From the NCBI RefSeq assembly GCF_001194135.2, contig NC_068985.1, positions 102,425,702 through 102,489,701 on the forward strand: a stretch of 64,000 nucleotides of DNA, written 5' to 3'. The position numbers and the translations under genes were made by a program. Of this stretch, positions 2,166 through 63,290 are shown one piece after another (within the stretch, counting starts at the first letter, position 1; each line of letters starts with the position of its first letter). The notes below the pieces were generated by a model, which saw only the letters and a program-made list of their open reading frames with translations, ran no database searches and was not told the origin of the DNA. This DNA comes from Octopus bimaculoides (taxonomy: Eukaryota).

Positions 2166-2239
2166 ACATTTCTATCTGTTTTCGGTTTTTGTGTAATGAT
2201 GCCAATTACTGGCGATTTTTGCTCGCATTAGATAATATT

Positions 2240-2297
2240 GACGGTCACGGTGATGTAGACATTGATAATGATGATTACGACGACGATGATGATGATA

Positions 2298-2357
<60 letters not shown>

Positions 2358-2710
2358 GTGGTCGTGGTCGTGGTGGTGGTGGTGATGATGATGATGATGA
2401 TGATGACGATGACGACGACGACGGTAGTGATGGTGATTCCATAAAGTATGATTTTGGCGGTGATAACGACGATGAGGAGGTGGAGGATGCGGTTGGGGTG
2501 GAGGTGGGGTTGTTTATAGTGATAATGTCGTTCCTGCTGATAATGATGATGATGATGATGATGATGATGTTCATGATGACGATAATGATGATAACGATGG
2601 CGACAACGACGATGATGATGACGATGATGATGATGAAGATAATTGGATGAAGATTTTGATGATATTCGTGGCAGTGGTGGCAGTGTCGATGGTGGTAATG
2701 GTAACGATGT
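2240..2710. repeat. Compound degenerate (GAT)n/(GAC)n/(GGT)n trinucleotide tract
   Basis: Direct reading; explains the poly-D/M/H ORFs at 2189-2790. Confidence 0.95.
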
Positions 2711-5060
2711 ATTCGAAGTAAGCGATGTTCTGTATCTGAAAATCGTATGTATTCGTTGGCTGATTGCAAACATTCTGATACTCTAGTCATCCTTAATTTT
2801 ACTTACTTTTTTGTCCATTTTCACTTTCGTTCTTGTTTTTTAATTAATCCTGCACTATATCATTCACCTCCATTTCCCTACCGCTTTCAATTATAAACAT
2901 GGTGTGCATACATACATACATGTATATATACATATATATATAGATCNNNNNNNNNNNNNNNNNNNNNNNNNNNNNNNNNNNNNNNNNNNNNNNNNNNNNN
3001 NNNNNNNNNNNNNNNNNNNNNNNNNNNNNNNNNNNNNNNNNNATATATATATATATATATATATATATACCAAATATATAATTGAAAGTGCTAGGAAAAT
3101 GGTGGTGAATAACATACATTCATATATGCATAGATATACGTACATACATATATGTATATGTATATACATACATATATATTATATATGTATACATATATAC
3201 ACATATATATGCATATATACATATATATATATATATATATAAACATATTATATATATATATATATAAACATATTAATACAGACATACATACATATATTAT
3301 ACTACATATAAACATATACGTGTACACAAATAATGACTTATTTATTTACTTATTTGATTTTTACTTCTTTAAGTAGATTTTCAATCTTCTCTTTCAACAA
3401 AATGTATGTTGTGGCGAATAATTGAGGTTGTGCGAATAAGAAAAGTTAGAAGAAGTACACACATATCAAATGGATATACTTTGTTATTCGTGTTAACATG
3501 ATTATGAGGCCTCGGGTGAAAATGATTTACAGGTATGACATTTGTGTTCCAATCTGCGCAGTAAATAGAGTGTATGTCACGATGTAAATCTACATATAAA
3601 GAGATGTATCAGAACACATGGGTATGTACGTATATACATATATATATATNNNNNNNNNNNNNNNNNNNNNNNNNNNNNNNNNNNNNNNNNNNNNNNNNNN
3701 NNNNNNNNNNNNNNNNNNNNNNNNNNNNNNNNNNNNNNNNNNNNNNNNNNNNNNNNNNNNNNNNNNNNNNNNNNNNNNNNNNNNNNNNNNNNNNNNNNNN
3801 NNNNNNNNNNNNNNNNNNNNNNNNNNNNNNNNNNNNNNNNNNNNNNNNNNNNNNNNNNNNNNNNNNNNNNNNNNNNNNNNNNNNNNNNNNNNNNNNNNNN
3901 NNNNNNNNNNNNNNNNNNNNNNNNNNNNNNNNNNNNNNNNNNNNNNNNNNNNNNNNNNNNNNNNNNNNNNNNNNNNNNNNNNNNNNNNNNNNNNNNNNNN
4001 NNNNNNNNNNNNNNNNNNNNNNNNNNNNNNNNNNNNNNNNNNNNNNNNNNNNNNNNNNNNNNNNNNNNNNNNNNNNNNNNNNNNNNNNNNNNNNNNNNNN
4101 NNNNNNNNNNNNNNNNNNNNNNNNNNNNNNNNNNNNNNNNNNNNNNNNNNNNNNNNNNNNNNNNNNNNNNNNNNNNNNNNNNNNNNNNNNNNNNNNNNNN
4201 NNNNNNNNNNNNNNNNNNNNNNNNNNNNNNNNNNNNNNNNNNNNNNNNNNNNNNNNNNNNNNNNNNNNNNNNNNNNNNNNNNNNNNNNNNNNNNNNNNNN
4301 NNNNNNNNNNNNNNNNNNNNNNNNNNNNNNNNNNNNNNNNNNNNNNNNNNNNNNNNNNNNNNNNNNNNNNNNNNNNNNNNNNNNNNNNNNNNNNNNNNNN
4401 NNNNNNNNNNNNNNNNNNNNNNNNNNNNNNNNNNNNNNNNNNNNNNNNNNNNNNNNNNNNNNNNNNNNNNNNNNNNNNNNNNNNNNNNNNNNNNNNNNNN
4501 NNNNNNNNNNNNNNNNNNNNNNNNNNNNNNNNNNNNNNNNNTATATGTATACAAAGATTCGTGAGTGGATGAGCTCATCTACATACGTATAGGACTGCCA
4601 AACATACATGGGTGTGCATGTGTGTATGTAATTATCTTATTTATATCGGCATCATTATATATATGCGTACATAAACATATCCTTGTTTTCTGTACGAATG
4701 TGTTTATGGGCATCTGTGTATTTGCATTCTACTCACTGCAAGCAAAACTGCATCGTTTTATGTATGCATACATCTCCAATACTTACTCTTTAGTATACGT
4801 ACATACATGTGCATGTATGTATATAAGTGTGCATCTATGAATACGTAAAGATATATTTCTAATATACATCCGCTTTCGCGTCACAGATAGCTAAATATGT
4901 ATACTCAAGTAAAAGAAACATGGCCGTAGGAAAGAAAAGAATACATCGTTTTTTTTTTCTTGTAAGTATTTCTTGAATGCAACTAATGATATAATTGTAT
5001 ATACGGGTGTGTATGTGTGTATGTATCTATGTGTGCGAGTGAATGCACGTATGTATGTAT

Positions 5061-5389
5061 GGAGGTGCAATGGCCCAGTGGTTAAGGTAGCGGACTCGTA
5101 GTCGTGGGATCGCGGTTCAGATTCCCACACCGAGCGGCATTGCGATATTCGTTGAGCTATAACACCGAAAGCTCCACGAGGCTCAGCAGGCGGTGGTGAC
5201 GAACTCAGCTATACTGGGTTTCACAACAACATTCTCTCACGCTTTCTTACTGCTTTTGTTCTACTTGCATTTCAAAGGGACAGTCTTGTCACAGGCTGTG
5301 TCACGCTGAATCTCCCCGAGAACTATGTGAATGGTACACGTGTCTGTGGAGTGCTCAACCCTCATCGTCGTAACCGACGGAGTGCCACG

Positions 5390-12267: not shown

Positions 12268-12604
12268 CTAAAACGAATAGAGGAGATTTTGACATTGACA
12301 GCTCATTATTAACCGTTCACATCATTTGCTTCTAGTTGTTGTTTATCAAACTATTGATGTTTTTTTTATTGGTATTACTACCTTAGTCGTGAGTGTTGGA
12401 CTTATTTCTACTCTCGTAACTGTTGCTAAATGTGTTCTTCTTGTAGGTCGTTGCTATCACTATAGTTATATAAGGATTTTGTCATTGTATTGTTTGTACA
12501 GAGAGTATGCTTTAATATTGCACTTGTAATTGTTGTTGTGTTTCACTGTTGGATTTTGTAGTTGTTTTAGTATCGATTTTATTATTTATGTGAAGACACG
12601 CATG

Positions 12605-12661
<57 letters not shown>

Positions 12662-13208
12662 TTTCTCACACACATACATACACACACGTAAACACACACA
12701 CATAGATATAAACATATATATATATATATATTGGTTTCAGATTTTGGCACAAGGCCAGCAATTTCGGTGGAGTGGGCAAGTCGACCCTAGTGCTTAAATT
12801 GTACTTAATTTATCATGAAAATATAAAAGGTAAAGTCGACCTCTGTGGAATTTGAACTCAGAACAGAAAGATGGATGAAATGCCGCTCAGCGGTTTGCCC
12901 GGTGTGCTGACAATTCTATGAGATCTCTGCTAAAACGAATAGAGGAGATTTTGACATTGACAGCTCATTATTAACCGTTCACATCATTTGCTTCTAGCTG
13001 TTGTTTATCAAACTATTGATGTTTTTTTTATTGGTATTACTACCTTAGTCGTGAGTGTTGGACTTATTTCTACTCTCGTAACTGTTGCTAAATGTGTTCT
13101 TCTTGTAGGTCGTTGCTATCACTATAGTTATATAAGGATTTTGTCATTGTATTGTTTGTACAGAGAGTATGCTTTAATATTGCACTTGCAATTGTTGTTG
13201 TGTTTCAC
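12268..13208 (+). repeat. Direct duplication of a 279-bp unique segment (12268-12546 and 12930-13208)
   Basis: Offset 662 nt with two substitutions seen (tagTtgttg/tagCtgttg, cttgTaatt/cttgCaatt); the second copy runs into an N-gap. Confidence 0.92.
12731..12917 (-). mobile_element. Family-D tRNA-like SINE
   Basis: Reverse complement contains GAGTTCAAATTCC (B box), GGTCGACTTTACCTTT and the tail TTGCTGGCCTTGTGCCAAAATCTGAAACCAA. Confidence 0.85.
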
Positions 13209-13394
13209 NNNNNNNNNNNNNNNNNNNNNNNNNNNNNNNNNNNNNNNNNNNNNNNNNNNNNNNNNNNNNNNNNNNNNNNNNNNNNNNNNNNNNNNNNNNN
13301 NNNNNNNNNNNNNNNNNNNNNNNNNNNNNNNNNNNNNNNNNNNNNNNNNNNNNNNNNNNNNNNNNNNNNNNNNNNNNNNNNNNNNNNNNNNNNN

Positions 13395-15174: not shown

Positions 15175-15387
15175 ATATTGATTTCAAATTTTGGCACAAC
15201 GCCAGCAATTTCAGAGGATTGTCGATTACTACTACTCCAGTATTCAACTAATACTTATTTTATCGACCCCCAGAAAATGGAAAGTTAACTTGACCTCAAC
15301 GGGATTTGAACTCTGAACACGAAAACAGACGAAATGCCACTAAGCAGTTTGTCTGACGTGCTCACGATTCAACGACTTCGTCGCCTT
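15175..15387 (-). mobile_element. Family-D SINE
   Basis: Colinear with 61499-61732 (atttgaactc, gacgaaatgccactaagca, tcgcc) and carries the gccagcaattt/ttttggcaca tail. Confidence 0.82.
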
Positions 15388-18670: not shown

Positions 18671-19207
18671 TTGTTACATCAATCTCATTGTTATCATCTG
18701 TCATCATCAAAACCAGAATTCCTTATTGTACAAACGTGTCCATACACACAATGTTGAAAAACCGTTGCACCGAAAGAGAGTTCGAAAATGTATGTATTTC
18801 TGCTTGCGCACGCGCGTGTGTGTATGCGTGTGCGCGCATGCGTGCATGTGTGTGCATGCATGTGTGTGTTTATACATGTATGTATATAATAAATAGAAGC
18901 GCGGCGAGAACCATTGTGCATGTTTTATGGGCGGCCATACATTTGATGCACAAGACGATTGCAAATACGGCCAACCACGCACACAATTATGAGCTTATTA
19001 GAGTTCATCTATATACATGAGTTTTTAATTTCCTTAGATACCCCCACCTGCTTATTATTACATATTTTTGTATATTTCTATACTTTTAATGCTTCCATCC
19101 TCTCTACCTATCAACCAAATTTATTACACGTTCACTTATGATCGCTTTTAAAATTTCTTCTTTTCTGTATTCCTGTCCTTCATCCTGTCTGTGGCAGTGT
19201 TACCCCA

Positions 19208-19250
<43 letters not shown>

Positions 19251-19280
19251 TATATATAGTTTATTATTTCCGAAGGCGAC

Positions 19281-19281
19281 G

Positions 19282-19363
<82 letters not shown>

Positions 19364-19462
19364 CGGTGGTGGACGTGGTGGACGCGGTGGACGTGGTGGA
19401 TGTGGTGGAGGTGGTGGTGGTGATGGTGGTTGTGGTGGTGGTGGTGGTATTAGTAGTAGTAT

Positions 19463-19493
<31 letters not shown>

Positions 19494-19641
19494 GGTGGTC
19501 GTAGTAGTAGTAGTAGTAGTAGTAGTAGCGGTGGTGGACGTGGTGGACGTGGTGGACGTGGTGGATGTGGTGGAGGTGGTGGTAATGATGGTGGTTGTGG
19601 TGGTGGTGGTGGTAGTAGTAGTAGTAATAGTAGTAGTAGTA

Positions 19642-19691
<50 letters not shown>

Positions 19692-19692
19692 T
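19281..19692. repeat. (GTA)n/(GTG)n compound array with an internal 165-nt-period duplication
   Basis: Unit gcggtggtggacgtggtggac... starts at both 19363 and 19528. Confidence 0.93.
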
Positions 19693-20374
19693 TTCATAAA
19701 TAAGACAAAATGATGAGATCATTGATAATAATAATAATAACGAATCAATAGAGCAAAAATTGATACTGTAGCTAATATTTCCTAATTGTTATAATTATTA
19801 TAGCCACGCTTTTTTGTTACCTTTTTTTTTTTTCTATTTTCAATTGTTTCATTCCGGTTAAAAATCGTGATGTGCATCTTAAAAAAGCGATGTTCTAACT
19901 TTTCGAGACAAAAGTACTGCTCGTATAACTTTCTGCAGACCATTATTTTCAGATAATTCAATAAACAGTGGAATTATTATTGAATTTCCATTTTTTTTTT
20001 TTAACAACGGCGAATTTCAGCATGACTTGTTATATAACATCAGATGTATTATTATGTTTCTGTGTATATAGAACCAGTAAAAAGCAGAGGCTGAGGTCGC
20101 TACTCATGGTCTTTGTCGGCAGAATTCATTGTTTAGTGTTTGATATTTGGAAATAATCGTTCAAAGACCGTATTTAGAAATGAAATGTCATTTACTATGG
20201 TTTAGAGTAGCACCTGTAGGGCAGCTTGTTTAAAATATTTCAAGTAAGCGATAGAAACTTCTCAACAATTTCTTGCGTATCCACGAACTCACGAACGACA
20301 CCTCCCGACCTCCAGCAAATTTTTGCACCGAACAAGATCTTAGCTCGAGCCGTCTAAAATCTCATATATATTTA

Positions 20375-20894: not shown

Positions 20895-21224
20895 TTGTTG
20901 TTGTTGGCACTGCGTCGCTCACGACGTCGAGAGTTCCAGTTGATCCGATCAAGGGAAAAGCCTGCTCGTGAAATTAACGTGCAAGTGGCTGAGCACTCCA
21001 CAGGCACGTGTACCCTTAACGTAGTTCTCGGGGATATTCAGTGTGACAACGCTGACCCTTTGAATTACAGATACGACAAAAACAGGAAGTAAGAGAAGAT
21101 GAAAGATTACAGCAGATGTAGGTGTTTTCGCTCAATAAACACTCACAACGCCCGGTCTGGGAATCGAAACCGCGATCCTATGACTGCGAGTCCGCTGCCC
21201 TAACCACTGGGCCATTACGGCTCC
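20895..21224 (-). mobile_element. Full-length family-A SINE with a 10-bp target-site duplication
   Basis: A box TGGCCCAGTGG, B box GGTTTCGATTCC, (AAC)n tail; TTATGAAATT at both 20887-20896 and 21229-21238. Confidence 0.92.
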
Positions 21225-21304
21225 ACAGTTATGAAATTATAACATGCTTAAATCTGTTTCAATGAAAGCGTTCGCTTTATGCTTGCCATTTTGCTTATAT
21301 TTTA

Positions 21305-22983: not shown

Positions 22984-23217
22984 CTATAAAGTAGCAGCAT
23001 AAACAATATTCTTGGTTTTACTGTTTGATGTGAGTATGAAGATATTGTTACCATTTCCAATTCTAGAACAACCAATATAGAGCTGACTATGAGAAAAGTA
23101 CTGTTGCATGAAGTGAAGTCCAGCAATGTTCAATGATTGTCCTTGGCTCTTGTTAATTGACGTTGCAAAACTAACTCTTACTGGAAATTGAAGTCTCTTG
23201 AAGTCTCTTCCAAAAGG
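22984..23217 (-). mobile_element. Helitron Rep/Helicase C-terminal remnant (PIF1-like SF1 helicase motifs V-VI)
   Basis: Translation PF..FKRLQFPVRVSFATSINKSQGQSL..AGL....YFSHSQLYIGCSRIG....IFIL.....TKNIVY matches the Helitron signature FKRxQFPVRLAFAMTINKSQGQSL...FSHGQLYVAxSRV...TKNIVY; homology is lost upstream. Confidence 0.88.
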
Positions 23218-23330
23218 GCATAATATGTCTATGTAGAGCAAATGTAGGTGGAGATGCAGGGGTCCCAGGTGGAGAGATAGAATTTCGCCTTTATTAATTG
23301 TCTATGGGTTTATTCTTAAAACCTCCGATT

Positions 23331-23518
23331 GAAGGTGGCAAGCTGGTAGGTCCATTAGGATAAAATGCTTAGCATTCTGTGTTCAAATTTCGCGAGGTCG
23401 ACTTTGTCTTTAAATCTTTCAGGATCGATAAAATAAATCTCAGTTGAACACTGGGGACAATGTAATCGACTTTTTGCTCCCCTGAATTTGCAGGATTTTG
23501 CCAAAATTTGAAACCAAT
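23331..23518 (+). mobile_element. Family-D SINE
   Basis: aaggtggcaagctgg..gttcaaatttcgcgaggtcgactttgtcttt..atcgataaaataa..ctgggg..tgtaatcgac..gccaaaatttgaaaccaat. Confidence 0.85.
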
Positions 23519-23685
23519 ACTGAACATTCGGAGGACAATATGGTTTACTACTTTGTTAAATATGTCACTCAGGTAACATTTATCGCTGATATTTCAGTAA
23601 CTTTATATAGTCCTTCTCGAGAGACTAGTAATAATATCCTGTTGCTGTTTAATAAATATTGCTGCTTCTGCCACCTTGCTTATGT

Positions 23686-28478: not shown

Positions 28479-28509
<31 letters not shown>

Positions 28510-28571
28510 CAGGGACAGAGAGAGTGTGTATGTTTATGTGTTTGTGTTTACATAAATGTATGCATGTTTAC

Positions 28572-28609
<38 letters not shown>

Positions 28610-29459
28610 GTAAACATGCATACATTTATGTAAACACAAACACATAAACATACACACTCTCTCTGTCCCTCTCTCTCTCTCACACACACACATATTGATT
28701 TGAATATACTGGTGAGAAAAGCAAGCTATTCTAGTGTGTATTAAATATATAATTAAAATTTATAATACATAGATATATATTTGGCATGTATGTCTGTGTG
28801 TGTGTGTGTGATGACATATATTAAATATATAATACATATATATGGGTGTATTTAACATAAATGCATAATACATTTCAATTATATATTTCAATACTACAGT
28901 TACACGCGATGTACATTTAAACAGACACTCACACACGTACAAAACACTAATGCACAGATATAGATATCAAAGAACGCATCTATGTTTACTTACATACCTA
29001 CACACACGTGTATATTTACACGTACATACATACATACATGCATACACTCACACAAATATATATCTGTATGTGTGTATGCATATTTGTGAATTAAAGCTAT
29101 CATTGGTTTCATGTCAAGAAAAGTAGGAAATTATCCTAGTATCATAACAATTTTTCAAGCTGATCACATAGAGAAAGTTGTTCGTCTCCATTCTGGAAAA
29201 CACAGATTGTGCTTTTAGCGATGAGCTGTTTTTCACAGCTCATCGATGACAGTCATGTTTTAGTATTACTCCAACCAAGCCTAATTCAAACTAATGACAG
29301 AGGAAAATTCTTCTTCGCAGAATATCATATTTATACACCCTGCAAAGATCGTACCAATAATACATAAATCGTTGCATACAGTTTTCGACAGTATATCAAC
29401 CAGTATTCGATAGTCAATAGATATTCAAATCTAAAACCTCCCTCCAGTTTACTAGTATT

Positions 29460-29881: not shown

Positions 29882-30503
29882 ATTGGTTTCAAATTTTGGC
29901 ACAAGGTTAGCAATTTCGGTAGAGATTGTTACTCGAATACATCAACCACATTGTAAAACTGATATTTTAATGTATCATGCGGAGGTGCAATGGCCCAGTG
30001 GTTTGGGCAGCGGACTCGCGGTCATAGGATCGCAGTTTCGATTCCCAAACCGGGCGTTGTGAGTGTTTATTGAGTGAAAATACCTAAAGCCCCACAAGGT
30101 TCCGGCAGGGGATTGTGGCGAACCCTGCTGTACTCTTCCACCACAACTTTCTCTCACACTTACTTCCTGTTTCTGTTGTGCCTGTAATTCAAAGGGTCAG
30201 CCTTGTCACACTGTGTCACACTGAATATCCCCGAGAACTACGTTAAGGGTACACGTGTCTGTGGAGTGCTCAGCCATTAGCACGTTAATTTCACGAGCAG
30301 GTAGTTCCGTTGATCGGATCAACTGTAACCTTCGATGTCGTAAGTGACGGAGTGCCAACAACAACAACAACTTTAATTTATCGACGCCGAAAGAATGAAA
30401 GGCAAAGTAGACCTCGGTGAAATTTGAACTCAGTGCTTAAGGATAGGTGAAATTTCGTTAAGCATTTTGCTCAGCTTACCGACGCTTCTCAGAGTTCGCC
30501 GCC
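29882..30503 (-). mobile_element. Family-D SINE interrupted by a family-A insertion
   Basis: D tail at 29882-29980; D body and head resume at 30372 (tttatcgacgccgaaagaatgaaaggcaaagtagacctcgg..atttgaactc..agttcgccgcc). Confidence 0.85.
29981..30371 (+). mobile_element. Full-length family-A SINE nested in a D SINE
   Basis: A box and B box, CORE-like gttgtgagtgtttattgagtgaaaatacctaaagc, (AAC)n tail; degenerate TSD tttaatgtatcatgc / tttaatttatcgacgc. Confidence 0.93.
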
Positions 30504-31129
30504 TCAGAATATTCCAAAATTAAAAATTATAAACGCTAGTAATTATCATGTAAACAACTTTTCTTGCGTTGACATTTACTAGTCAACAAGAGAAGAGAAC
30601 AGACGAATGCATAAAAATGTACCTATGCATGTATGGATGGATGAATGAATCTTTGTCTGTATGTATGTATGTATGATTGTATTAATGTATGTATGTATGT
30701 ATGTATGTATGTATGTATGTATGTATGTATGGGAGATGAAAAAAGAGAAAGAGTAAGTGTGAGATTAACAGCAAGTTAGCGTAAATATATTTGAAAATTC
30801 TGAATCTATTTTATTTTAATGTTTTCATAACTTATCAACGATATGCAGTTTTAATTTGACGCTCTGACACACGGAATTTTCATAATGCAATATTTAATTA
30901 TATATAATACATGTGACCTTCCTATTTACGAATATTTTTTTCTAAATTGAATTACAATTAATCTTTCGCACCTGTTTCAATATATTTCGCAGAACACTAA
31001 TATGGTAAACAACAGCTTGCCAAAGAAAGTTTTGCATATTTTCTATTACAAATAACATACATAAATATACAAATGCATACGTCTATATGTGTGTACGTAC
31101 GTACGTACGTACGTACGTACGTACATGAT

Positions 31130-33410: not shown

Positions 33411-33696
33411 GCGCAATGGCCCAGTGGTGAGGGCAGCGGATTCCTGGTCGGAGGATCGCGGTTTCGATTCCCAGACCGGGCGTTGTGTGTGTTTATTGAG
33501 CGAAAACACCTAAAGCTGCGCGAGGCTCCGGCAGAGGGTGATGGCAACCCCTGTTGTATTCTTTCACCCCAACTTCCTCTTAATCTTTCTTCCTGTTTCT
33601 TGAGTAAAGTTGCGATGGACTGGCGTCCCGACCAGCTGGGGGGGATACACATACGCCCCAAAAAAACAAACAGGAAATCAGGCCCATGAGTCTGGC
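33411..33696 (+). mobile_element. Family-B SINE (same head as A, different 3' half)
   Basis: TGGCCCAGTGG..GGTTTCGATTCC head matches A; after cttcctgtttct it continues tgagtaaagttgcgatggactggcgtccc as in 62991-63290. Confidence 0.9.
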
Positions 33697-37133: not shown

Positions 37134-37288
37134 ATTATTTACATTATTTACATTGGACGGATATGTGTCGTTATCTGTTTGTTGTTACCACATCCTTTCG
37201 GCTGATTTACTCTCCAACCTTCATCAGGTGTCCTGGAAGAATTTTGATCTCCACCCTGATTTCTCAGTCCTAAGGTATTTTTTGCTGA

Positions 37289-37352
<64 letters not shown>

Positions 37353-37437
37353 TATTCAAAGCACTGCTAGGAATTGAACTCGAAATCTTAGCGTCAGTAG
37401 TCTGCACTCTTAACCATTACGCTATATGCTCGTGGGC
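37134..37437 (-). mobile_element. Family-H SINE: tRNA head + (AAT)n + body with a degenerate hammerhead ribozyme motif
   Basis: Minus strand: A box TAGCGTAATGGTT (37424-37412), B box GAGTTCAATTCCT (37381-37369), (AAT)n, then GGACAC-CTGATGA-A-GGTTGG/AGAGTAAA/TCAGCC-GAAA-GGAT-GTGGT. Confidence 0.8.
37187..37233 (-). ncRNA. Degenerate minimal type-I hammerhead ribozyme motif
   Basis: CUGAUGA (37227-37221), 6-bp stem II including G-U pairs, GAAA (37199-37196), stem I acac/gtgg with one mismatch. Reads GAAAGGAU where GAAAC-GUH is expected, so this copy is probably inactive. Confidence 0.55.
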
Positions 37438-37446
37438 ATAATAATG

Positions 37447-37501
<55 letters not shown>

Positions 37502-37690
37502 CAACAACAACAACATCAGCAAAAAATACCTTAATAATGAGAACCCAGGGTTGGGTTCAAAATTCTTCCAGGACACCTGATGAAACTTGTTAAAAGTCGA
37601 AACTTTCAGGTAGCAACAAATAAGGTGAGAACACATACCGGTCTAATGTAAATAATGTACAGAATTCCTCATCTCAAAAATATAAAATAG
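37438..37690 (+). mobile_element. Headless inverted second copy of the family-H body
   Basis: (AAT)n(AAC)n-catcagcaaaaaatacctta..aaaattcttccaggacacCTGATGAaacttgttaaaagtcGAAACtttcagg..aatgtaaataatgt is the reverse complement of 37134-37350. Confidence 0.85.
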
Positions 37691-38608: not shown

Positions 38609-38995
38609 TGACGTACGTGACCTGGAGTATAGGATGATGCACTCAGGAGTCCCAGGTCGTGATTTTATGATTTAAATTGCTGGACCTGGTGATGCGTTGT
38701 GTTCTTGGGCAAAACACTTCGTCACGTGTTGCCCTGCAATCAAAGTGATATCTGACGTATGTGTGCTGAAAGATTCCTGGCTTTAAGGGTGTCGCAAGAA
38801 ACCTGGATAGAGGATCAACTTTCCAAGTTCTTTTATAGGACTTTGATACACTGAAGGACTGCTGCAATACGTCTGTGAATCTGAGAGTGGTATAACCAAA
38901 GAACTAGGATGTAAGCGGTTCAACACAAGAGACCGATAGAATACGTGCCAGGCTTACAAAGAGTAAGTCTTGGGGCGAATCATTCGACTAAAATG
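38609..38995 (+). mobile_element. Degenerate SINE (family E) with a CORE-like segment and a C-type 3' module
   Basis: gcgttgtgttcttgggcaaaacactt is CORE-like; the 3' end agcggttcaacacaagagaccgatagaatacgtgccaggcttacaaagagtaagtcttgggg matches C. Confidence 0.65.
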
Positions 38996-39120
38996 CGGGC
39001 GGGCGGGCGGATGGATGGATGGGTGGGTGGATGGGTGGATGGATGGGTGGATCGGTTTTTGGGTGTTTAGGTAAGTAGGTAGGTAGTTAGGTAGATAGAT
39101 AGATAGATAGATAGATAGAC

Positions 39121-44285: not shown

Positions 44286-44519
44286 GTGTTGCTGTTTATT
44301 AATGCTTTGCACTACTTCTTTACTTCTTTTTCCATTTTCTTCTTCTTTTTCTTCTTTATTTCTCCTTTCGTTATTACTCTCATCATCACCACCGTTATCA
44401 TCATCGTCATCAGCATTAGCAGCACCACCACCGCCACCACAACCACAACCACCACCACCACCACCATCAACATTATCATTATTGCATTTTATTACTATTA
44501 TACGTTATCATTTCCAAAG

Positions 44520-44876
<357 letters not shown>

Positions 44877-45922
44877 CTTTTATTATTAGTTTCCCCAGCG
44901 TTCCTTACTGTTATTATTAACGTTATAATCGTCGTCGTCGTCGTCTTTCATGCTAGAAGTGGCTTTAGATGCTTTACAAATTACTTTATTTTGGCTTTGT
45001 TGTGTTACTTAATATGGAGATAAATTCAATAAACCTTTACAATTCCTTTTAAGCTGTGTATGGAGAGACTGTGTAATGATATTTTCATGGCTAGGCTGGC
45101 ACGGAGTGGCGGAGAGCATTGTGGACAAAGCGAGCAAAGGGGAAAATAACGTGCAAGATAAGAATCGGAAAGATAAAGCGATAAGAAGGAGGGATAAAAG
45201 AACGCAAAAGAGAAAACATGTGGTTTGTAGTAGTAGTGGTGGTGGTGATGGTGGTGGTNNNNNNNNNNNNNNNNNNNNNNNNNNNNNNNNNNNNNNNNNN
45301 NNNNNNNNNNNNNNNNNNNNNNNNNNNNNNNNNNNNNNNNNNNNNNNNNNNNNNNNNNNNNNNNNNNNNNNNNNNNNNNNNNNNNNNNNNNNNNNNNNNN
45401 NNNNNNNNNNNNNNNNNNNNNNNNNNNNNNNNNNNNNNNNNNNNNNNNNNNNNNNNNNNNNNNNNNNNNNNNNNNNNNNNNNNNNNNNNNNNNNNNNNNN
45501 NNNNNNNNNNNNNNNNNNNNNNNNNNNNNNNNNNNNNNNNNNNNNNNNNNNNNNNNNNNNNNNNNNNNNNNNNNNNNNNNNNNNNNNNNNNNNNNNNNNN
45601 NNNNNNNNNNNNNNNNNNNNNNNNNNNNNNNNNNNNNNNNNNNNNNNNNNNNNNNNNNNNNNNNNNNNNNNNNNNNNNNNNNNNNNNNNNNNNNNNNNNN
45701 NNNNNNNNNNNNNNNNNNNNNNNNNNNNNNNNNNNNNNNNNNNNNNNNNNNNNNNNNNNNNNNNNNNNNNNNNNNNNNNNNNNNNNNNNNNNNNNNNNNN
45801 NNNNNNNNNNNNNNNNNNNNNNNNNNNNNNNNNNNNNNNNNNNNNNNNNNNNNNNNNNNNNNNNNNNNNNNNNNNNNNNTATATATATATATATACATTT
45901 ATATATATGTATGCTTATAGGT

Positions 45923-49236: not shown

Positions 49237-49630
49237 AAGGCGGCGAGCTGGCAGGAAAGTTATCATGCCGGACGAAATGCTTAGCGGTATTTCGTCTGTC
49301 TTTACATCCTGAGTTCAAATTCCGCCGAGGTTGAATTTGCCTTTCATCCTTTCGGGGTCGATTAAATAAGTGCCTGTTACACACTGGGATCGATGTAATC
49401 GACTTAATTCCTTGTTTGTCCATTCTATGTTTAGCCCCCTGCGGGCAATAGCAAAAAAGGTATTTAGTCTGGTTTTACGTCTTGAGTTCAAATTCCGCGG
49501 AGGTGGACTTAGCCTTTCATACTTTCAGTGTCGATAAATTATTACGTACCAGTTGCGAACTAGAGTCGATCTAATCGACTGACCCCCTCCTCCAAAATTT
49601 CGGGCGTTGTGCCTTGAGTAGAACAGAATA
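49237..49630 (+). mobile_element. Family-D SINE dimer: full copy followed by a headless copy with a different tail
   Basis: ggtatttcgtctgtctttac..gagttcaaattccgcc recurs at about 49459 as ggtatttagtctggttttac..gagttcaaattccgcg. Confidence 0.9.
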
Positions 49631-52771: not shown

Positions 52772-53010
52772 ACGTCGTAGCTAGCAGAAACGTCAGCACG
52801 CCGGGCGAAATGCTTAGCGGTATTTCGTCTGCCGTTACGTTCTGAGTTCAAATTCCGTCGAAGTCGACTTTGCCCTTCATCCTTTCGGGGTCGATACATT
52901 AAGTACCAGTCACGTACTGGGGTCGATGTAATCGACTTAATAAAAAAAAAGTCGGTGCTCCAGCATGGCTACAGTCAAATGACTGAAACAAGTAAAGGAG
53001 TAAAGGAGTA
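52772..53010 (+). mobile_element. Chimeric SINE: family-D head and body with a family-C 3' tail
   Basis: D sequence through gtcgatgtaatcgacttaa (about 52940), an A-run, then gtcggtgctccagcatggctacagtcaaatgactgaaacaagtaaagg. Confidence 0.9.
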
Positions 53011-53106
53011 ATGCTCTATTAAACACATACATTAAAACCCGTATCAAACGACAGTAGCAACAACAGCCGCAGCAGCAGCAGCAGCAGCAGCAGAAGAAGA
53101 AGCAGC

Positions 53107-53165
<59 letters not shown>

Positions 53166-53340
53166 TAGTAGTAGTAGTAATGCTGATGATGATGATTGAC
53201 AGATGATCTCTAGAACCATACTTTGTACAAATCCCAAAACATGGCAGTTATCAACCACCCAAGTCATCATACCGACTTGAACTTCTGGCTTGTCTCTTGA
53301 GGTCTCAAAACATAATCACCCAAACATATAACAATAACAG

Positions 53341-53830: not shown

Positions 53831-54722
53831 TCGCCGTTCAAAACATTGCATATGAATGTGAAAAGTTTTGGTCTACTCATTCACACACACTAGACAGAAG
53901 CTATGTGCATGCCAGGCTAGGATTATCCAACATAATTGCTTAATGTCCCTTTAAATTCCTAAATCCTTGAGAGGTCTGTAAGCCGTCTGTTCACAGCTCA
54001 AGAACAATTGTCAATTGAAAGTTGATATGCCTCGCACTAGATGTCACAACCTTCCAGTGGTCTCTACATTACATTGAATTCTTCACAACGCAATAATGAC
54101 TCATTGTCATTTTTCTGACTTTGCTTAGAAAGTTGATAACGTCATCGCTGCAGTTTTTAGTTGTCCGGCCTTCTTGGCTCCGGAAGGAGAGCCAATCTTA
54201 AATTCTTCGGTATATTGTCCTACTTGTTTTTCTTTCTCTACGTTTTTTGTATCGTATCTTACACTGTGTCACCCCTATCCACTCTTCATGTCTTCGTAAT
54301 TATTACAGAGTCGTAAAAGATTGCAAAAAGACACATCAGCACTCAATCTATGAAAGGAAAGCATTACGGTTTACAGAAGTTCGTGGCACTGTAGCTCAGT
54401 TACGTATTGTGCAATAGTAAGATACAAACATGAAACAAAACAGTGCTCATAATTCAGTCTAATAGATCTGTCGTTATTTTTCTTGTAATGCAAAGCCGCA
54501 ATTACAAAAATAGAACTATTGAAATAACAATCAATTTTTTTTAATAATTATAAAGGTGTCTTATATACAACATTACCAAAATTTATTTTTCTAAACAACC
54601 CGTTTCTGTTATACATATTGTCAATTGTACACGGTTGTGTTCCGTATTTAATTAATTTTTTCATTTAAGATATACATCACTATTATTCTTCAGAAAAGTA
54701 TGAAATTTTAAAATTTAAATTG

Positions 54723-54883
54723 TTTTTTTTTTCTTTGTAGGTAAGTGGCTCTCCCGCGTCTACTTCCGCGCCAAACTCTACAATTAACATGCATCATTGG
54801 AGCATGGCACACGCCTACAGGTGACCGAAAGTCCCTTCATATTTACATACATCGCCGCTGACACTGTCTTTTAGGAGGTAAGT
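54723..54883 (+). other. Candidate recursive splice site (AG|GT) with a downstream 137-nt cryptic exon
   Basis: 14-nt pure pyrimidine tract + GTAG (54723-54740) immediately followed by GTAAGT (54741-54746); second donor GAG|GTAAGT at 54878. Confidence 0.55.
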
Positions 54884-55051
54884 CACATCTTAATGGCAAA
54901 CAAGGACTCCAAATGTCGCACGCGTCCTTTTTATAATTTTTGCTTACCTGTGCCTACGTTTTTCTTTGTAATTATAAGCAAAAGGAATGCGAGTTTGTGC
55001 GTGCGTGCGTATCTGTGCGTATTATTGTTCTTGTTGTTAATTATAAAAATA

Positions 55052-55272
55052 ATGGTGGCGAGCTAGCAAATTAATTACGGAATCCAAATAGATGCCTTGC
55101 AAAAATTTATGCCGGTCCTCTACGTTCAGAGTTGGAACTCCATCAAGGTCAACCTTACCTTTCATACTCTCAGAATCGATAAAATAAAGTAAAATTCGAG
55201 TACGCGATTCACTAACTCCCACTAATCCCTCCCATCAATATCCCTAGACTTGTGCCTGAATTAGAAATAATT
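55052..55272 (+). mobile_element. Degenerate family-D SINE
   Basis: ggtggcgagctagcaaa..ctacgttcagagttggaactcc..ggtcaaccttacctttcatactctcagaatcgataaaataaagta..gacttgtgcctgaattagaaa. Confidence 0.78.
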
Positions 55273-61498: not shown

Positions 61499-61731
61499 TT
61501 ATTTCTTTACTACCCACAAGAGGCTACACACAGAGGGGACAAACAAGGAGAGACAAACGGATTAAGTCGATTAAACCGACCCCAGTGCGTAACTGGTACT
61601 TATTTAATCGACCCCGAAAGGATGAAAGGCAACGTCGACCTCGGCAGAATTTGATTTCAGAACGTAGCGGCAGACGAAATACCGCTAAGCATTTCGCCCG
61701 GCGTGCTAACGTTTATGCCAGCTCGCCGACT

Positions 61732-61732
<1 letters not shown>
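61499..61732 (-). mobile_element. Well-preserved full-length family-D SINE between two (TG)n tracts
   Basis: Reverse complement: gtcggcgagctggcataaacgttagcacgccgggcgaaatgcttagcggtatttcgtctg..gcctttcatcctttcggggtcgattaaataagtaccag..gtgggtagtaaagaaat. Confidence 0.93.
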
Positions 61733-62923: not shown

Positions 62924-62990
62924 TGAATATAAACGAGATGACGTTATTCACCCGCAACAGATTTCATCATATAAATACATTCCGCATAGT

Positions 62991-63290
62991 GGAGGCGCAG
63001 TGGTCCAGCGGTTAGGGCAGCGGACTCACGGTCGTGGGATCATGGTTTCGATTCCCAGACCGGGCGTTGTGAGTGTTTATTAAGCGAAAACACCTAAGCT
63101 CCACGAGGCTCCGGCAGGGGGGGGCGACCCCTGTTGTACTCTTTCGCCCCAACTTTCGCTTACTCTTTCTTCCTGTTTCTTGAGTAACGCTGCGATGGAC
63201 CGGCGTCCCGTCCAACTAGAGGAACACACACGCCATAGAAACCGTGGAACCGGGCCCATGAGCCTGGATAGGCTTTGAAAGGGCGACGTT
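62991..63290 (+). mobile_element. Full-length family-B SINE
   Basis: ggaggcgcagtggtccagcggttagggcagcggactc..ggtttcgattcccagaccggg head; B tail tgagtaacgctgcgatggaccggcgtcccgtcc..gggcccatgagcctgg. Confidence 0.92.

What the first reader, a model, noticed from the sequence alone, without database searches (positions are those of the whole stretch)
54723..54883. Textbook recursive splice site (zero-length exon) with a downstream poison exon
Seen: TTTTTTTTTTCTTTGTAG|GTAAGT, a strong acceptor fused to a perfect donor. A second perfect donor (GAG|GTAAGT, 54878) defines a 137-nt exon with stops in all three frames (TGA, TAA, TAA), in unique and locally CpG-rich sequence. Established: this AG|GT plus cryptic-exon layout is how recursive splicing sites look in long Drosophila and vertebrate neuronal introns. 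AGGTAAGT alone is expected about once per strand by chance (rough estimate); the 14-nt pyrimidine tract and paired donor make chance much less likely. Inference: recursive splicing in a very long plus-strand cephalopod intron, which I am not aware has been described. Alternative: a 5' UTR or first coding exon (ATGCATCATTGGAGCATGGCA..., possible donor CAG|GTGACC at 54821).
Basis: partly seen in the sequence, partly recalled or inferred. Interest (0 to 1): 0.72.

Follow-up and report, generated by a model that had tools for sequence, protein, structure and literature searches.

The report
Candidate recursive-splice exon, unproven
A 137-base stretch on the plus strand has the strongest splice-acceptor and splice-donor signals in the window and begins with a perfect donor, so it looks like a known type of recursive-splicing exon, but no host gene, RNA evidence or conservation could be checked here.

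Summary
The sequence observation is real and is not a chance-level motif. A 14-nt pyrimidine tract (54723-54736) plus GTAG (ending at 54740) abuts GTAAGT (54741-54746). A second GAG|GTAAGT follows at 54878, bounding 137 nt with stops in all three frames. Of 280 AGGT sites on both strands, this one scores 14.9 bits as a fused acceptor/donor; the next best scores 4.3. The unit 54741-54877 is the best exon-like unit on either strand. GC jumps from 0.16-0.18 just upstream to 0.50-0.54 inside it.

It therefore meets the sequence-level definition of a putative RS-exon or ratchet point, including TT at -5/-6.

What makes a site recursive could not be tested. I found no host gene or upstream exon, and the tools hold no transcript data and no orthologous DNA. 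A consistent T>A skew gives only a weak hint that the plus strand is transcribed.

Two points cut against the "textbook" label. The downstream donor is as strong as the ratchet donor, and published competition data show the stronger donor wins, so skipping is not predicted. The "CpG-rich" claim only reflects GC content.

Verdict: a good, testable candidate of a known kind, with about 0.4 probability of real recursive use.

The parts
54698..54738 (+). AG-free zone upstream of the acceptor, with candidate branch adenosines (TnA) at 54710 and 54717, 30 and 23 nt from the 3' splice site
   Evidence: the only AG dinucleotides in the 100 nt upstream are at 54668, 54692, 54697 and the acceptor at 54739. 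The TnA list is in the same call. Branch-point use is inferred.
54723..54736 (+). 14-nt polypyrimidine tract (T10 C T3); T at -5 and -6 relative to the acceptor
   Evidence: TT at -5/-6 was found in 196 of 197 Drosophila ratchet points (10.1101/006163).
54738..54740 (+). TAG 3' splice acceptor, the highest-scoring acceptor in the window on either strand
   Evidence: acceptor PWM score 15.9 bits. Only 4 (+) and 2 (-) acceptors in the window reach 12 bits.
54741..54746 (+). GTAAGT directly abutting the acceptor; this is the ratchet (RS) 5' splice site that would be regenerated after ligation to an upstream exon
   Evidence: fused AG|GT score 14.9, against 4.3 for the next best of 280 AGGT sites (mean -9.5, sd 6.0).
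54741..54877 (+). Putative RS-exon: 137 nt, GC 0.496, stops in all three frames, unique in the window
   Evidence: top exon-like unit on either strand (27.5 bits; next best 22.1 when the 80-nt variant of this same unit, 24.8 bits, is set aside). GC profile and stop positions; no other copy in the window.
54821..54826 (+). Alternative weaker donor CAG|GTGACC, giving an 80-nt version of the exon (54741-54820) that is open in frame 1
   Evidence: donor 8.9 bits; translation VSGSPASTSAPNSTINMHHWSMAHAY.
54878..54883 (+). Downstream consensus donor GAG|GTAAGT that closes the 137-nt unit
   Evidence: donor 11.6 bits; 11 plus-strand donors in the window reach 10 bits.

Best explanation
The unit 54741-54877 is a plus-strand exon-definition unit of the RS-exon type.

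Shown: it has the best acceptor in the window, a sharp AT-to-GC step at that acceptor, a consensus donor 137 nt downstream, and GTAAGT as its first six bases.

Inferred mechanism, taken from the fly and vertebrate model:
1. The spliceosome defines the unit across its acceptor and the 54878 donor (or the weaker 54821 donor).
2. An upstream exon of a long plus-strand transcript is ligated to 54741. This recreates a 5' splice site (exon end + GTAAGT) at the junction.
3. A second splicing reaction then uses one of two donors. If it uses the regenerated site, the 137 nt and the rest of the intron are removed (the 'zero-length exon' outcome). If it uses the 54878 donor, a stop-laden exon is kept.

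The intronic halves of the two donors are identical, so the sequence predicts competition, not obligatory skipping. An included exon would act as a poison exon only if the host intron interrupts a coding region. In a 5' UTR or a non-coding RNA it would be harmless.
For: - Sequence as described.
- The fused acceptor/donor is an extreme outlier: 14.9 bits against 4.3 for the next best of 280 AGGT sites.
- Y10NYAG|GTAAGT was found once, against 0 of 100 shuffles. Markov expectation is at most 0.0014 per strand.
- It is the best exon-like unit on either strand.
- GC is 0.16-0.18 immediately upstream and 0.50-0.54 inside. Only 3% of 137-nt windows are this GC-rich.
- TT at -5/-6 and the prominent Y-tract match 196 of 197 fly ratchet points.
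- There is an AG-free zone and TnA candidates 23-30 nt upstream.
- Stops in all frames fit the description of cryptic RS-exons as 'generally out of frame' (PMC8605326).
- Hints of plus-strand transcription: T>A on + in all eight 8-kb bins, strongest at 40-56 kb, where C>G also holds; T10 runs are 14 on + and 4 on -. The direction agrees with coding-strand skews reported for introns (PMC5786239).
- It is not a structured RNA and is not repeated in the window.
Against: - No host gene, upstream exon or downstream exon was identified.
- No RNA evidence and no cross-species comparison were possible.
- The downstream donor (11.6 bits, GAG|GTAAGT) is not weaker than the ratchet donor. In characterised cryptic RS-exons the ratchet donor is the stronger one, and the stronger donor is the one used.
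- 137 nt is longer than the roughly 50 nt typical in Drosophila.
- The GC-rich body suggests an expressed exon more than a cryptic one.
- My rough extrapolation gives about 100 chance Y10NYAG|GTAAGT sites in a genome of 2-3 Gb, about 20 of them with a decent donor within 300 nt. A single hit is therefore not proof.
- Genome-wide copy number of the unit is unknown.
Confidence: 0.4

Rival explanations
1. It is an ordinary expressed non-coding exon (an internal 5' UTR exon, a lncRNA exon or a regulated cassette) that merely happens to start with GTAAGT. It is included using the 54878 donor, and the regenerated donor is little used.
For: - Both splice sites are strong and the unit has a typical exon length.
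- The GC step sits exactly at the acceptor.
- The downstream donor is at least as strong as the ratchet donor, and the stronger donor is the one used in vivo.
- GT is the commonest dinucleotide at exon starts, and hundreds of annotated exons reconstitute a 5' splice site yet are still included (PMC6224609).
Against: - A full GTAAGT at an exon start is rare: my estimate is under 1e-3 of exons.
- Repression of regenerated donors by the exon junction complex was not seen in Drosophila, the only protostome tested. In a protostome a perfect regenerated donor would therefore be expected to compete.
- Stops in all frames restrict this reading to the minority of exons that are non-coding.
Confidence: 0.2
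2. It is a chance juxtaposition in untranscribed or antisense DNA, with no splicing function.
For: - The window is AT-rich and full of T-runs and microsatellites.
- AGGTAAGT alone is at chance level.
- No gene was found around it.
- The site was picked post hoc by a reader looking for motifs.
- Tens of similar configurations are expected by chance across a multi-gigabase genome (my extrapolation).
Against: - The joint configuration is expected only about 1e-5 to 5e-4 times per window. It comprises the best acceptor in the window, GTAAGT directly after it, and a consensus donor 137 nt away.
- The GC step coincides with the acceptor, which chance does not predict.
- The site stands 10.6 bits clear of the next AGGT.
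Confidence: 0.27
3. The acceptor comes from the poly(A) tail of an old retroposon inserted antisense, so that the tail reads as poly-T on the plus strand, as in Alu exonisation. The unit would then be repeat-derived and either unused or only sporadically exonised.
For: - A T10CTTT tract directly precedes a GC-richer body.
- T10 runs are 14 on + and 4 on -, which fits antisense retroposon tails in this region.
- SINE copies are abundant in the window.
Against: - No target-site duplication of 8 nt or more was found.
- There is no second copy of the body in 64 kb.
- The body does not match the two repeat families seen in the window.
- This origin would not exclude present-day use as an RS-exon.
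Confidence: 0.08
4. It is an 80-nt coding exon, or an exon carrying the start codon (54741-54820, donor CAG|GTGACC, ATG at 54789), of an unannotated plus-strand gene.
For: Frame 1 is open across the 80 nt. The donor at 54821 scores 8.9 bits.
Against: - The peptide VSGSPASTSAPNSTINMHHWSMAHAY has no database match. That test is weak for 26 residues.
- A much stronger donor lies 57 nt further on.
- No other coding exon is detectable in 64 kb.
Confidence: 0.05

Closest known systems
Drosophila intronic ratchet points with cryptic RS-exons (Ubx, kuz, Bx; Burnette 2005, Duff 2015, Joseph 2018/2021)
   Same: - Fused (Y)n-AG|GTAAGT.
- TT at -5/-6.
- Prominent pyrimidine tract.
- A downstream donor that can define a short exon.
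- Exon content with stops.
- A setting compatible with a very long intron: at least 54 kb upstream without a detectable exon.
   Different: - The exon's own donor is not weaker than the ratchet donor.
- The unit is 137 nt (or 80 nt), against about 50 nt in flies.
- The body is GC-rich.
- Conservation, a sawtooth read profile, ratchet junctions and lariats have not been examined.
- The host lineage is different.
Vertebrate RS-exons (cryptic ones in long neuronal genes, Sibley 2015; annotated ones repressed by the exon junction complex, Blazquez 2018)
   Same: It fits the operational definition: an exon whose start reconstitutes a 5' splice site after ligation to the preceding exon. The outcome is decided by competition between that site and the exon's own donor. 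Inclusion would introduce stop codons.
   Different: The RS-5'ss score cannot be computed because the upstream exon end is unknown. Whether the exon junction complex represses such sites in this lineage is unknown.
Poison or cassette exons and internal 5' UTR exons
   Same: Strong splice sites, typical exon length, stops in every frame.
   Different: These exons do not need GTAAGT at their first base. That feature is what singles out this unit.
Exonisation of antisense retroposons (Alu type)
   Same: A poly-T tract supplies the pyrimidine tract of an acceptor inside an intron.
   Different: No repeat identity, no target-site duplication and no additional copies were found.

Membership tests
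Intronic ratchet point / zero-nucleotide recursive splice site (Drosophila type) | [quoted passage not shown] | tested here: met
   TTTTTTTTTTCTTTGTAG|GTAAGT. Fused score is 14.9 bits against 4.3 for the next best of 280 AGGT sites. It appears in 0 of 100 shuffles.
Intronic ratchet point / zero-nucleotide recursive splice site (Drosophila type) | Prominent pyrimidine tract with TT at -5/-6 (196 of 197 fly ratchet points) | tested here: met
   positions 54735-54736 are TT, within a 14-nt Y tract. The criterion comes from 10.1101/006163.
Intronic ratchet point / zero-nucleotide recursive splice site (Drosophila type) | Lies on the sense strand inside a long intron (over about 10 kb) of an expressed gene | tested here: inconclusive
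   No exon or gene was detected on either strand. The positive control for the packed protein searches (a Helitron-like relic) also failed, so that negative result is weak. T>A skew on + in all 8 bins, and C>G at 40-56 kb, hint at plus-strand transcription.
Intronic ratchet point / zero-nucleotide recursive splice site (Drosophila type) | Short cryptic RS-exon closed by a downstream donor that is weaker than the ratchet donor | tested here: inconclusive
   Downstream donors exist at +80 (8.9 bits, weaker) and +137 (11.6 bits, GAG|GTAAGT, not weaker). The exonic half of the ratchet donor depends on the unknown upstream exon. The criterion comes from PMC8605326.
Intronic ratchet point / zero-nucleotide recursive splice site (Drosophila type) | The SA|SD core is much more conserved than its flanks and than the exon body | not testable with these tools
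   No related eukaryotic DNA was reachable: all returned nothing.
Intronic ratchet point / zero-nucleotide recursive splice site (Drosophila type) | RNA evidence: exon-to-ratchet junction reads, sawtooth coverage, recursive lariats | not testable with these tools
ORF look-ups in assembled runs returned nothing.
Putative RS-exon (Sibley 2015 / Blazquez 2018 definition) | An exon, bounded by an acceptor and a donor, whose first bases supply the intronic half of a 5' splice site | tested here: met
   Met at sequence level only. Whether it is actually spliced as an exon has not been tested.
Putative RS-exon (Sibley 2015 / Blazquez 2018 definition) | The 5' splice site reconstituted at the exon-exon junction scores above the species threshold | not testable with these tools
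   The upstream exon end is unknown, and no species-specific splice-site model is available. The intronic half is a perfect GTAAGT.
Poison exon | Inclusion introduces a premature stop in a coding transcript | tested here: inconclusive
   Stops are present in all three frames. Whether the host intron interrupts a coding sequence is unknown.
Structured non-coding RNA (snoRNA, miRNA and the like) | Match to a known RNA family, or folding energy beyond shuffles | tested here: not met
   No Rfam match at gathering score or at E<=1. Folding z-score is +0.41.
Dispersed repeat / antisense retroposon | Further copies, target-site duplication | tested here: inconclusive
   No other copy in the window and no TSD. 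Genome-wide copy number could not be examined.

The most novel reading that the evidence does not exclude
Recursive splicing operates in long introns of a cephalopod (lophotrochozoan) gene, and this is one of its sites. It would be built like a fly ratchet point but paired with an equally strong downstream donor, so the same unit toggles between traceless removal and inclusion of a stop-laden exon. That would extend recursive splicing beyond insects and vertebrates. It would also offer a natural test of donor competition in a lineage where repression by the exon junction complex is uncharacterised.
Probability: 0.35. Interest if true: 0.55.

Novelty: new member of a known kind. Interest (0 to 1): 0.36.

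Why it matters
According to the papers read here, recursive splicing has been documented in Drosophila and in vertebrates. In the searchable library only one paper mentions both recursive splicing and cephalopods, and it is off-topic.

Cephalopods combine very long introns with large nervous systems (my own knowledge, not tested here). That is the setting where recursive splicing matters most in other animals.

A validated site would show the mechanism in a third major animal lineage. It would also give a concrete locus for asking how a cell chooses between two equal donors. As it stands, this is a single sequence-only candidate, and its value is that it can be tested directly with existing kinds of data.

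Tried and rejected
1. Orthologous or transcript sequence. I translated all local ORFs (54129-55063, both strands, plus the three exon frames) and searched the 5.8-billion-protein set: no hit. Exact-product look-ups for four window ORFs found nothing on record. Exact DNA scans of metagenome (two), prokaryote-genome and viral collections gave 0 hits.

2. Host gene.
- Pfam on all six-frame ORFs of 50 aa or more: nothing.
- The Helitron-like relic in the minus-strand pack should have served as a positive control and also gave nothing, so these negatives are weak.
- A splice-site-plus-open-frame scan found no convincing coding exon on either strand.

3. Third AGGTAAGT at 39069 as a second site: rejected, because it lies in a GGTA/GATA microsatellite.

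4. Structured RNA: rejected.

5. Antisense retroposon origin: no target-site duplication and no extra copy. Not excluded genome-wide.

6. Poly(A)-signal asymmetry as evidence for the sense strand. AATAAA is 69 on + and 120 on -, but the T>A skew predicts about 78 on +. This is not independent evidence.

7. A Markov simulation timed out and was replaced by an analytic calculation.

8. CpG-island idea: rejected. CpG observed/expected is 0.99 locally and 0.90 window-wide.

Full report
**The observation**

A 14-nt pyrimidine tract, T10CT3, occupies 54723-54736. It is followed by G and then TAG, ending at 54740. GTAAGT follows immediately at 54741-54746. A second consensus donor, GAG|GTAAGT, has its GT at 54878, so the two donors bound a 137-nt interval (54741-54877).

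Every frame of that interval is closed: frame 1 by TGA at 54822; frame 2 by TAA at 54742 and TGA at 54859; frame 3 by TAA at 54785 and TAG at 54872. The alternative donor CAG|GTGACC (GT at 54821) is also present. It gives an 80-nt version that is open in frame 1.

**Is it more than chance?**

The octamer AGGTAAGT alone is not. It occurs three times on the plus strand and never on the minus strand, and dinucleotide shuffles expect 1.9 for both strands together. The third copy, at 39069, sits inside a GGTA/GATA microsatellite and carries no information.

The full configuration is a different matter:
- Y10-N-Y-AG|GTAAGT occurs once, and in none of 100 shuffles.
- Markov models of order 1-4 expect 0.0002-0.0014 copies per strand.
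- An empirical estimate gives about 0.0025 per window: seven Y10NYAG sites on both strands times the observed GTAAGT frequency of about 3e-4 per position.

I scored all 280 AGGT tetranucleotides of the window as fused acceptor/donor sites, using a generic metazoan weight matrix against the window's own base composition. This site scores 14.9 bits and the next best scores 4.3; the mean is -9.5 and the standard deviation 6.0.

In a scan for acceptor-donor pairs 30-500 nt apart, 54741-54877 is the best exon-like unit on either strand. It scores 27.5 bits; the only nearer score, 24.8, belongs to its own 80-nt variant, and the best unrelated pair scores 22.1. Its acceptor, at 15.9 bits, is the best in the window.

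A further AGGTAAGT within 30-300 nt has a probability of at most about 0.005. A donor of 8 bits or more within that range has a probability of about 0.2. Extrapolating to a genome of 2-3 Gb (a size I assume from general knowledge of octopus genomes, not from a tool), I estimate:
- about 100 chance copies of the fused motif;
- about 20 of these with a decent downstream donor;
- fewer than one with a second perfect octamer.

The site is therefore unlikely to be chance, but a single hit is not proof.

**Exon-like composition**

GC content is 0.16-0.18 in the 100 nt before the acceptor. It is 0.50-0.54 in the first 100 nt of the unit, 0.42 at its end, and 0.38-0.42 beyond it. Only 3% of 137-nt windows in the 64 kb reach the unit's GC of 0.496. 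A sharp AT-to-GC step exactly at the acceptor is what real exons show in AT-rich genomes, and chance does not predict it.

CpG observed/expected is 0.99 in the unit and 0.90 in the whole window.

Upstream of the acceptor there is a 41-nt AG-free zone. It contains TnA candidates 23 and 30 nt from the splice site, so a branch point is plausible.

**Alternatives that were checked**

- The unit is not repeated in the window.
- It has no Rfam match, even at E<=1.
- It does not fold better than shuffled sequence (z = +0.41).
- An origin of the T-tract as the tail of an antisense retroposon remains possible. It has no support from a target-site duplication or from extra copies.

**Surroundings**

The window is 32% GC and has eleven assembly gaps. 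It is dense in microsatellites and in two interspersed repeat families. No tool here confirmed the organism.

I found no gene on either strand:
- Pfam on all six-frame ORFs of 50 aa or more gave nothing.
- Packed ORF sets of each strand against the large protein database gave nothing.
- A scan for open-frame exon candidates found nothing convincing.

The database negatives are weak. A Helitron-type helicase relic at 22987-23301 (minus strand) was in the minus-strand pack and should have acted as a positive control, yet it produced no hit there. On its own it scores only E = 0.011 against a Pfam helicase model.

The window therefore looks like deep intron or intergenic DNA, and I cannot say which.

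The only evidence on strand is compositional:
- After masking simple repeats, T exceeds A on the plus strand in all eight 8-kb bins, with skew from -0.015 to -0.081.
- The skew is strongest between 40 and 56 kb, where C also exceeds G.
- T10 runs number 14 on the plus strand and 4 on the minus strand.

One paper states that T generally exceeds A on the coding strand of introns and that C exceeds G in invertebrates (PMC5786239). The direction therefore fits a plus-strand transcription unit. It is a hint and no more.

The AATAAA asymmetry (69 on the plus strand, 120 on the minus strand) is largely explained by the same skew. I do not count it as independent evidence.

**Comparison with what is known**

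Recursive sites are defined as tandem acceptor-donor pairs (PMC8605326; PMC6110457). In Drosophila:
- they lie in introns of 11-133 kb;
- they are far better conserved than other AG|GT sites in the same introns (10.1101/006163).

They work through a cryptic RS-exon, short and of variable length (about 50 nt), closed by a downstream donor. [quoted passage not shown] In flies and in mammals the ratchet donor is generally the stronger of the two. In vivo mutagenesis shows that the outcome follows whichever donor is stronger. Efficient recursive splicing of cryptic RS-exons likewise requires a strong regenerated site that outcompetes the exon's own donor (PMC6224609). The same paper defines any exon that reconstitutes a 5' splice site at its upstream junction as a putative RS-exon. 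It finds cryptic ones prevalent in Drosophila and included, EJC-protected ones prevalent in deuterostomes.

The present unit meets every sequence-level criterion: the fused motif, the Y-tract, TT at -5/-6 (54735-54736), a downstream donor, and stops in all frames.

It departs in one respect that matters. The 54878 donor (GAG|GTAAGT, 11.6 bits) is not weaker than the ratchet donor, whose intronic half is identical and whose exonic half depends on an unknown upstream exon. Only the 54821 donor (8.9 bits) fits the "weaker donor" pattern. By the published competition rule, the sequence does not predict traceless removal. It predicts a contest, and hence at least partial inclusion of the 137 nt.

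The 137-nt length and the GC-rich body point the same way, towards a unit that is sometimes or always an expressed exon.

**Mechanism and probabilities**

I commit to the RS-exon reading.
1. The unit is defined as an exon on a long plus-strand transcript.
2. An upstream exon is ligated to 54741, which regenerates a donor.
3. A second reaction uses either that donor (the zero-length outcome) or the 54878 donor (inclusion).

Inclusion would be poisonous only if the host intron interrupts a coding sequence. What is shown is the sequence anatomy and its statistical exceptionality. Transcription, both splicing steps and the outcome are all inferred.

My probabilities:
- about 0.6 that this is a genuinely spliced plus-strand unit;
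- about 0.4 that the regenerated donor is really used there (the best explanation);
- about 0.2 that it is simply an included non-coding exon;
- about 0.27 that it is a non-functional chance motif;
- smaller shares for a repeat-derived acceptor (0.08) and for an 80-nt coding exon (0.05).

**Novelty and verdict**

If true, this is a new member of a known kind: recursive splicing in a lineage where the searchable literature has no report. Only one paper contains both "recursive splicing" and "cephalopod", and it is off-topic. A specialist would find it plausible and not startling.

"Textbook" is too strong because of the equal donors.

The decisive tests are ordinary. They are to place the window in its annotated assembly, inspect total-RNA and long-read data for junctions at 54740/54741 and 54877/54878, compare the region with other cephalopod genomes, and count the motif on the sense and antisense strands of long introns.

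Noticed in passing
window 22987-23301 (-): A 105-aa ORF carries a PIF1/Helitron-type helicase C-terminal motif (FPVRVSFATSINKSQGQSL...SHSQLYIGCSR). It has a weak Pfam Herpes_Helicase match (E = 0.011). This is probably a Helitron relic.
   Followed up: partly
window 28489-28692: A 204-nt near-perfect (98%) palindrome centred on a (TA)n run and flanked by TG/GA and CA/TC microsatellites.
   Followed up: no
window 37134-37665: A foldback element of about 530 nt. Its arms are about 75% complementary, and inner (TTA)n and (TAA)n runs flank a tRNA-like core. This could be a MITE or foldback transposon.
   Followed up: no
window 12268-12546 and 12930-13208: Two 279-nt copies are 99.3% identical, and the second ends at the assembly gap 13209-13394. 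This is either an assembly duplication or a very recent local duplication.
   Followed up: no
window 5060-5360, 20895-21258, 29981-30367, 33411-33695, 62956-63267; and 12728-12917, 15175-15370, 23373-23519, 30373-30504, 49237-49613, 52779-52941, 55146-55196, 61513-61732: Two interspersed repeat families (SINE-like, 70-90% identity, both orientations). One member's tail lies about 270 nt downstream of the finding.
   Followed up: partly
window 39069-39076: The only other AGGTAAGT in the window lies inside a GGTA/GATA tetranucleotide microsatellite, next to a SINE-like segment at about 38620-38980. It is not a splice signal.
   Followed up: yes
window 54943-54951 (-): A good minus-strand donor-like site (CAG|GTAAGC on the minus strand) lies about 70 nt downstream of the unit. 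It did not pair with any strong minus-strand acceptor.
   Followed up: partly
whole window: T exceeds A on the plus strand in all eight 8-kb bins. T10 runs are 14 on + and 4 on -. AATAAA is 69 on + and 120 on -. This long-range strand asymmetry is compatible with one plus-strand transcription unit or with orientation-biased retroposon tails.
   Followed up: partly
window 2189-2790, 19200-19713, 44286-45023, 53040-53174: Long trinucleotide-repeat tracts produce spurious homopolymeric ORFs (D-, T-, V- and Q/stop-rich). Together with eleven N gaps they mark this as a repeat-dense draft assembly.
   Followed up: no
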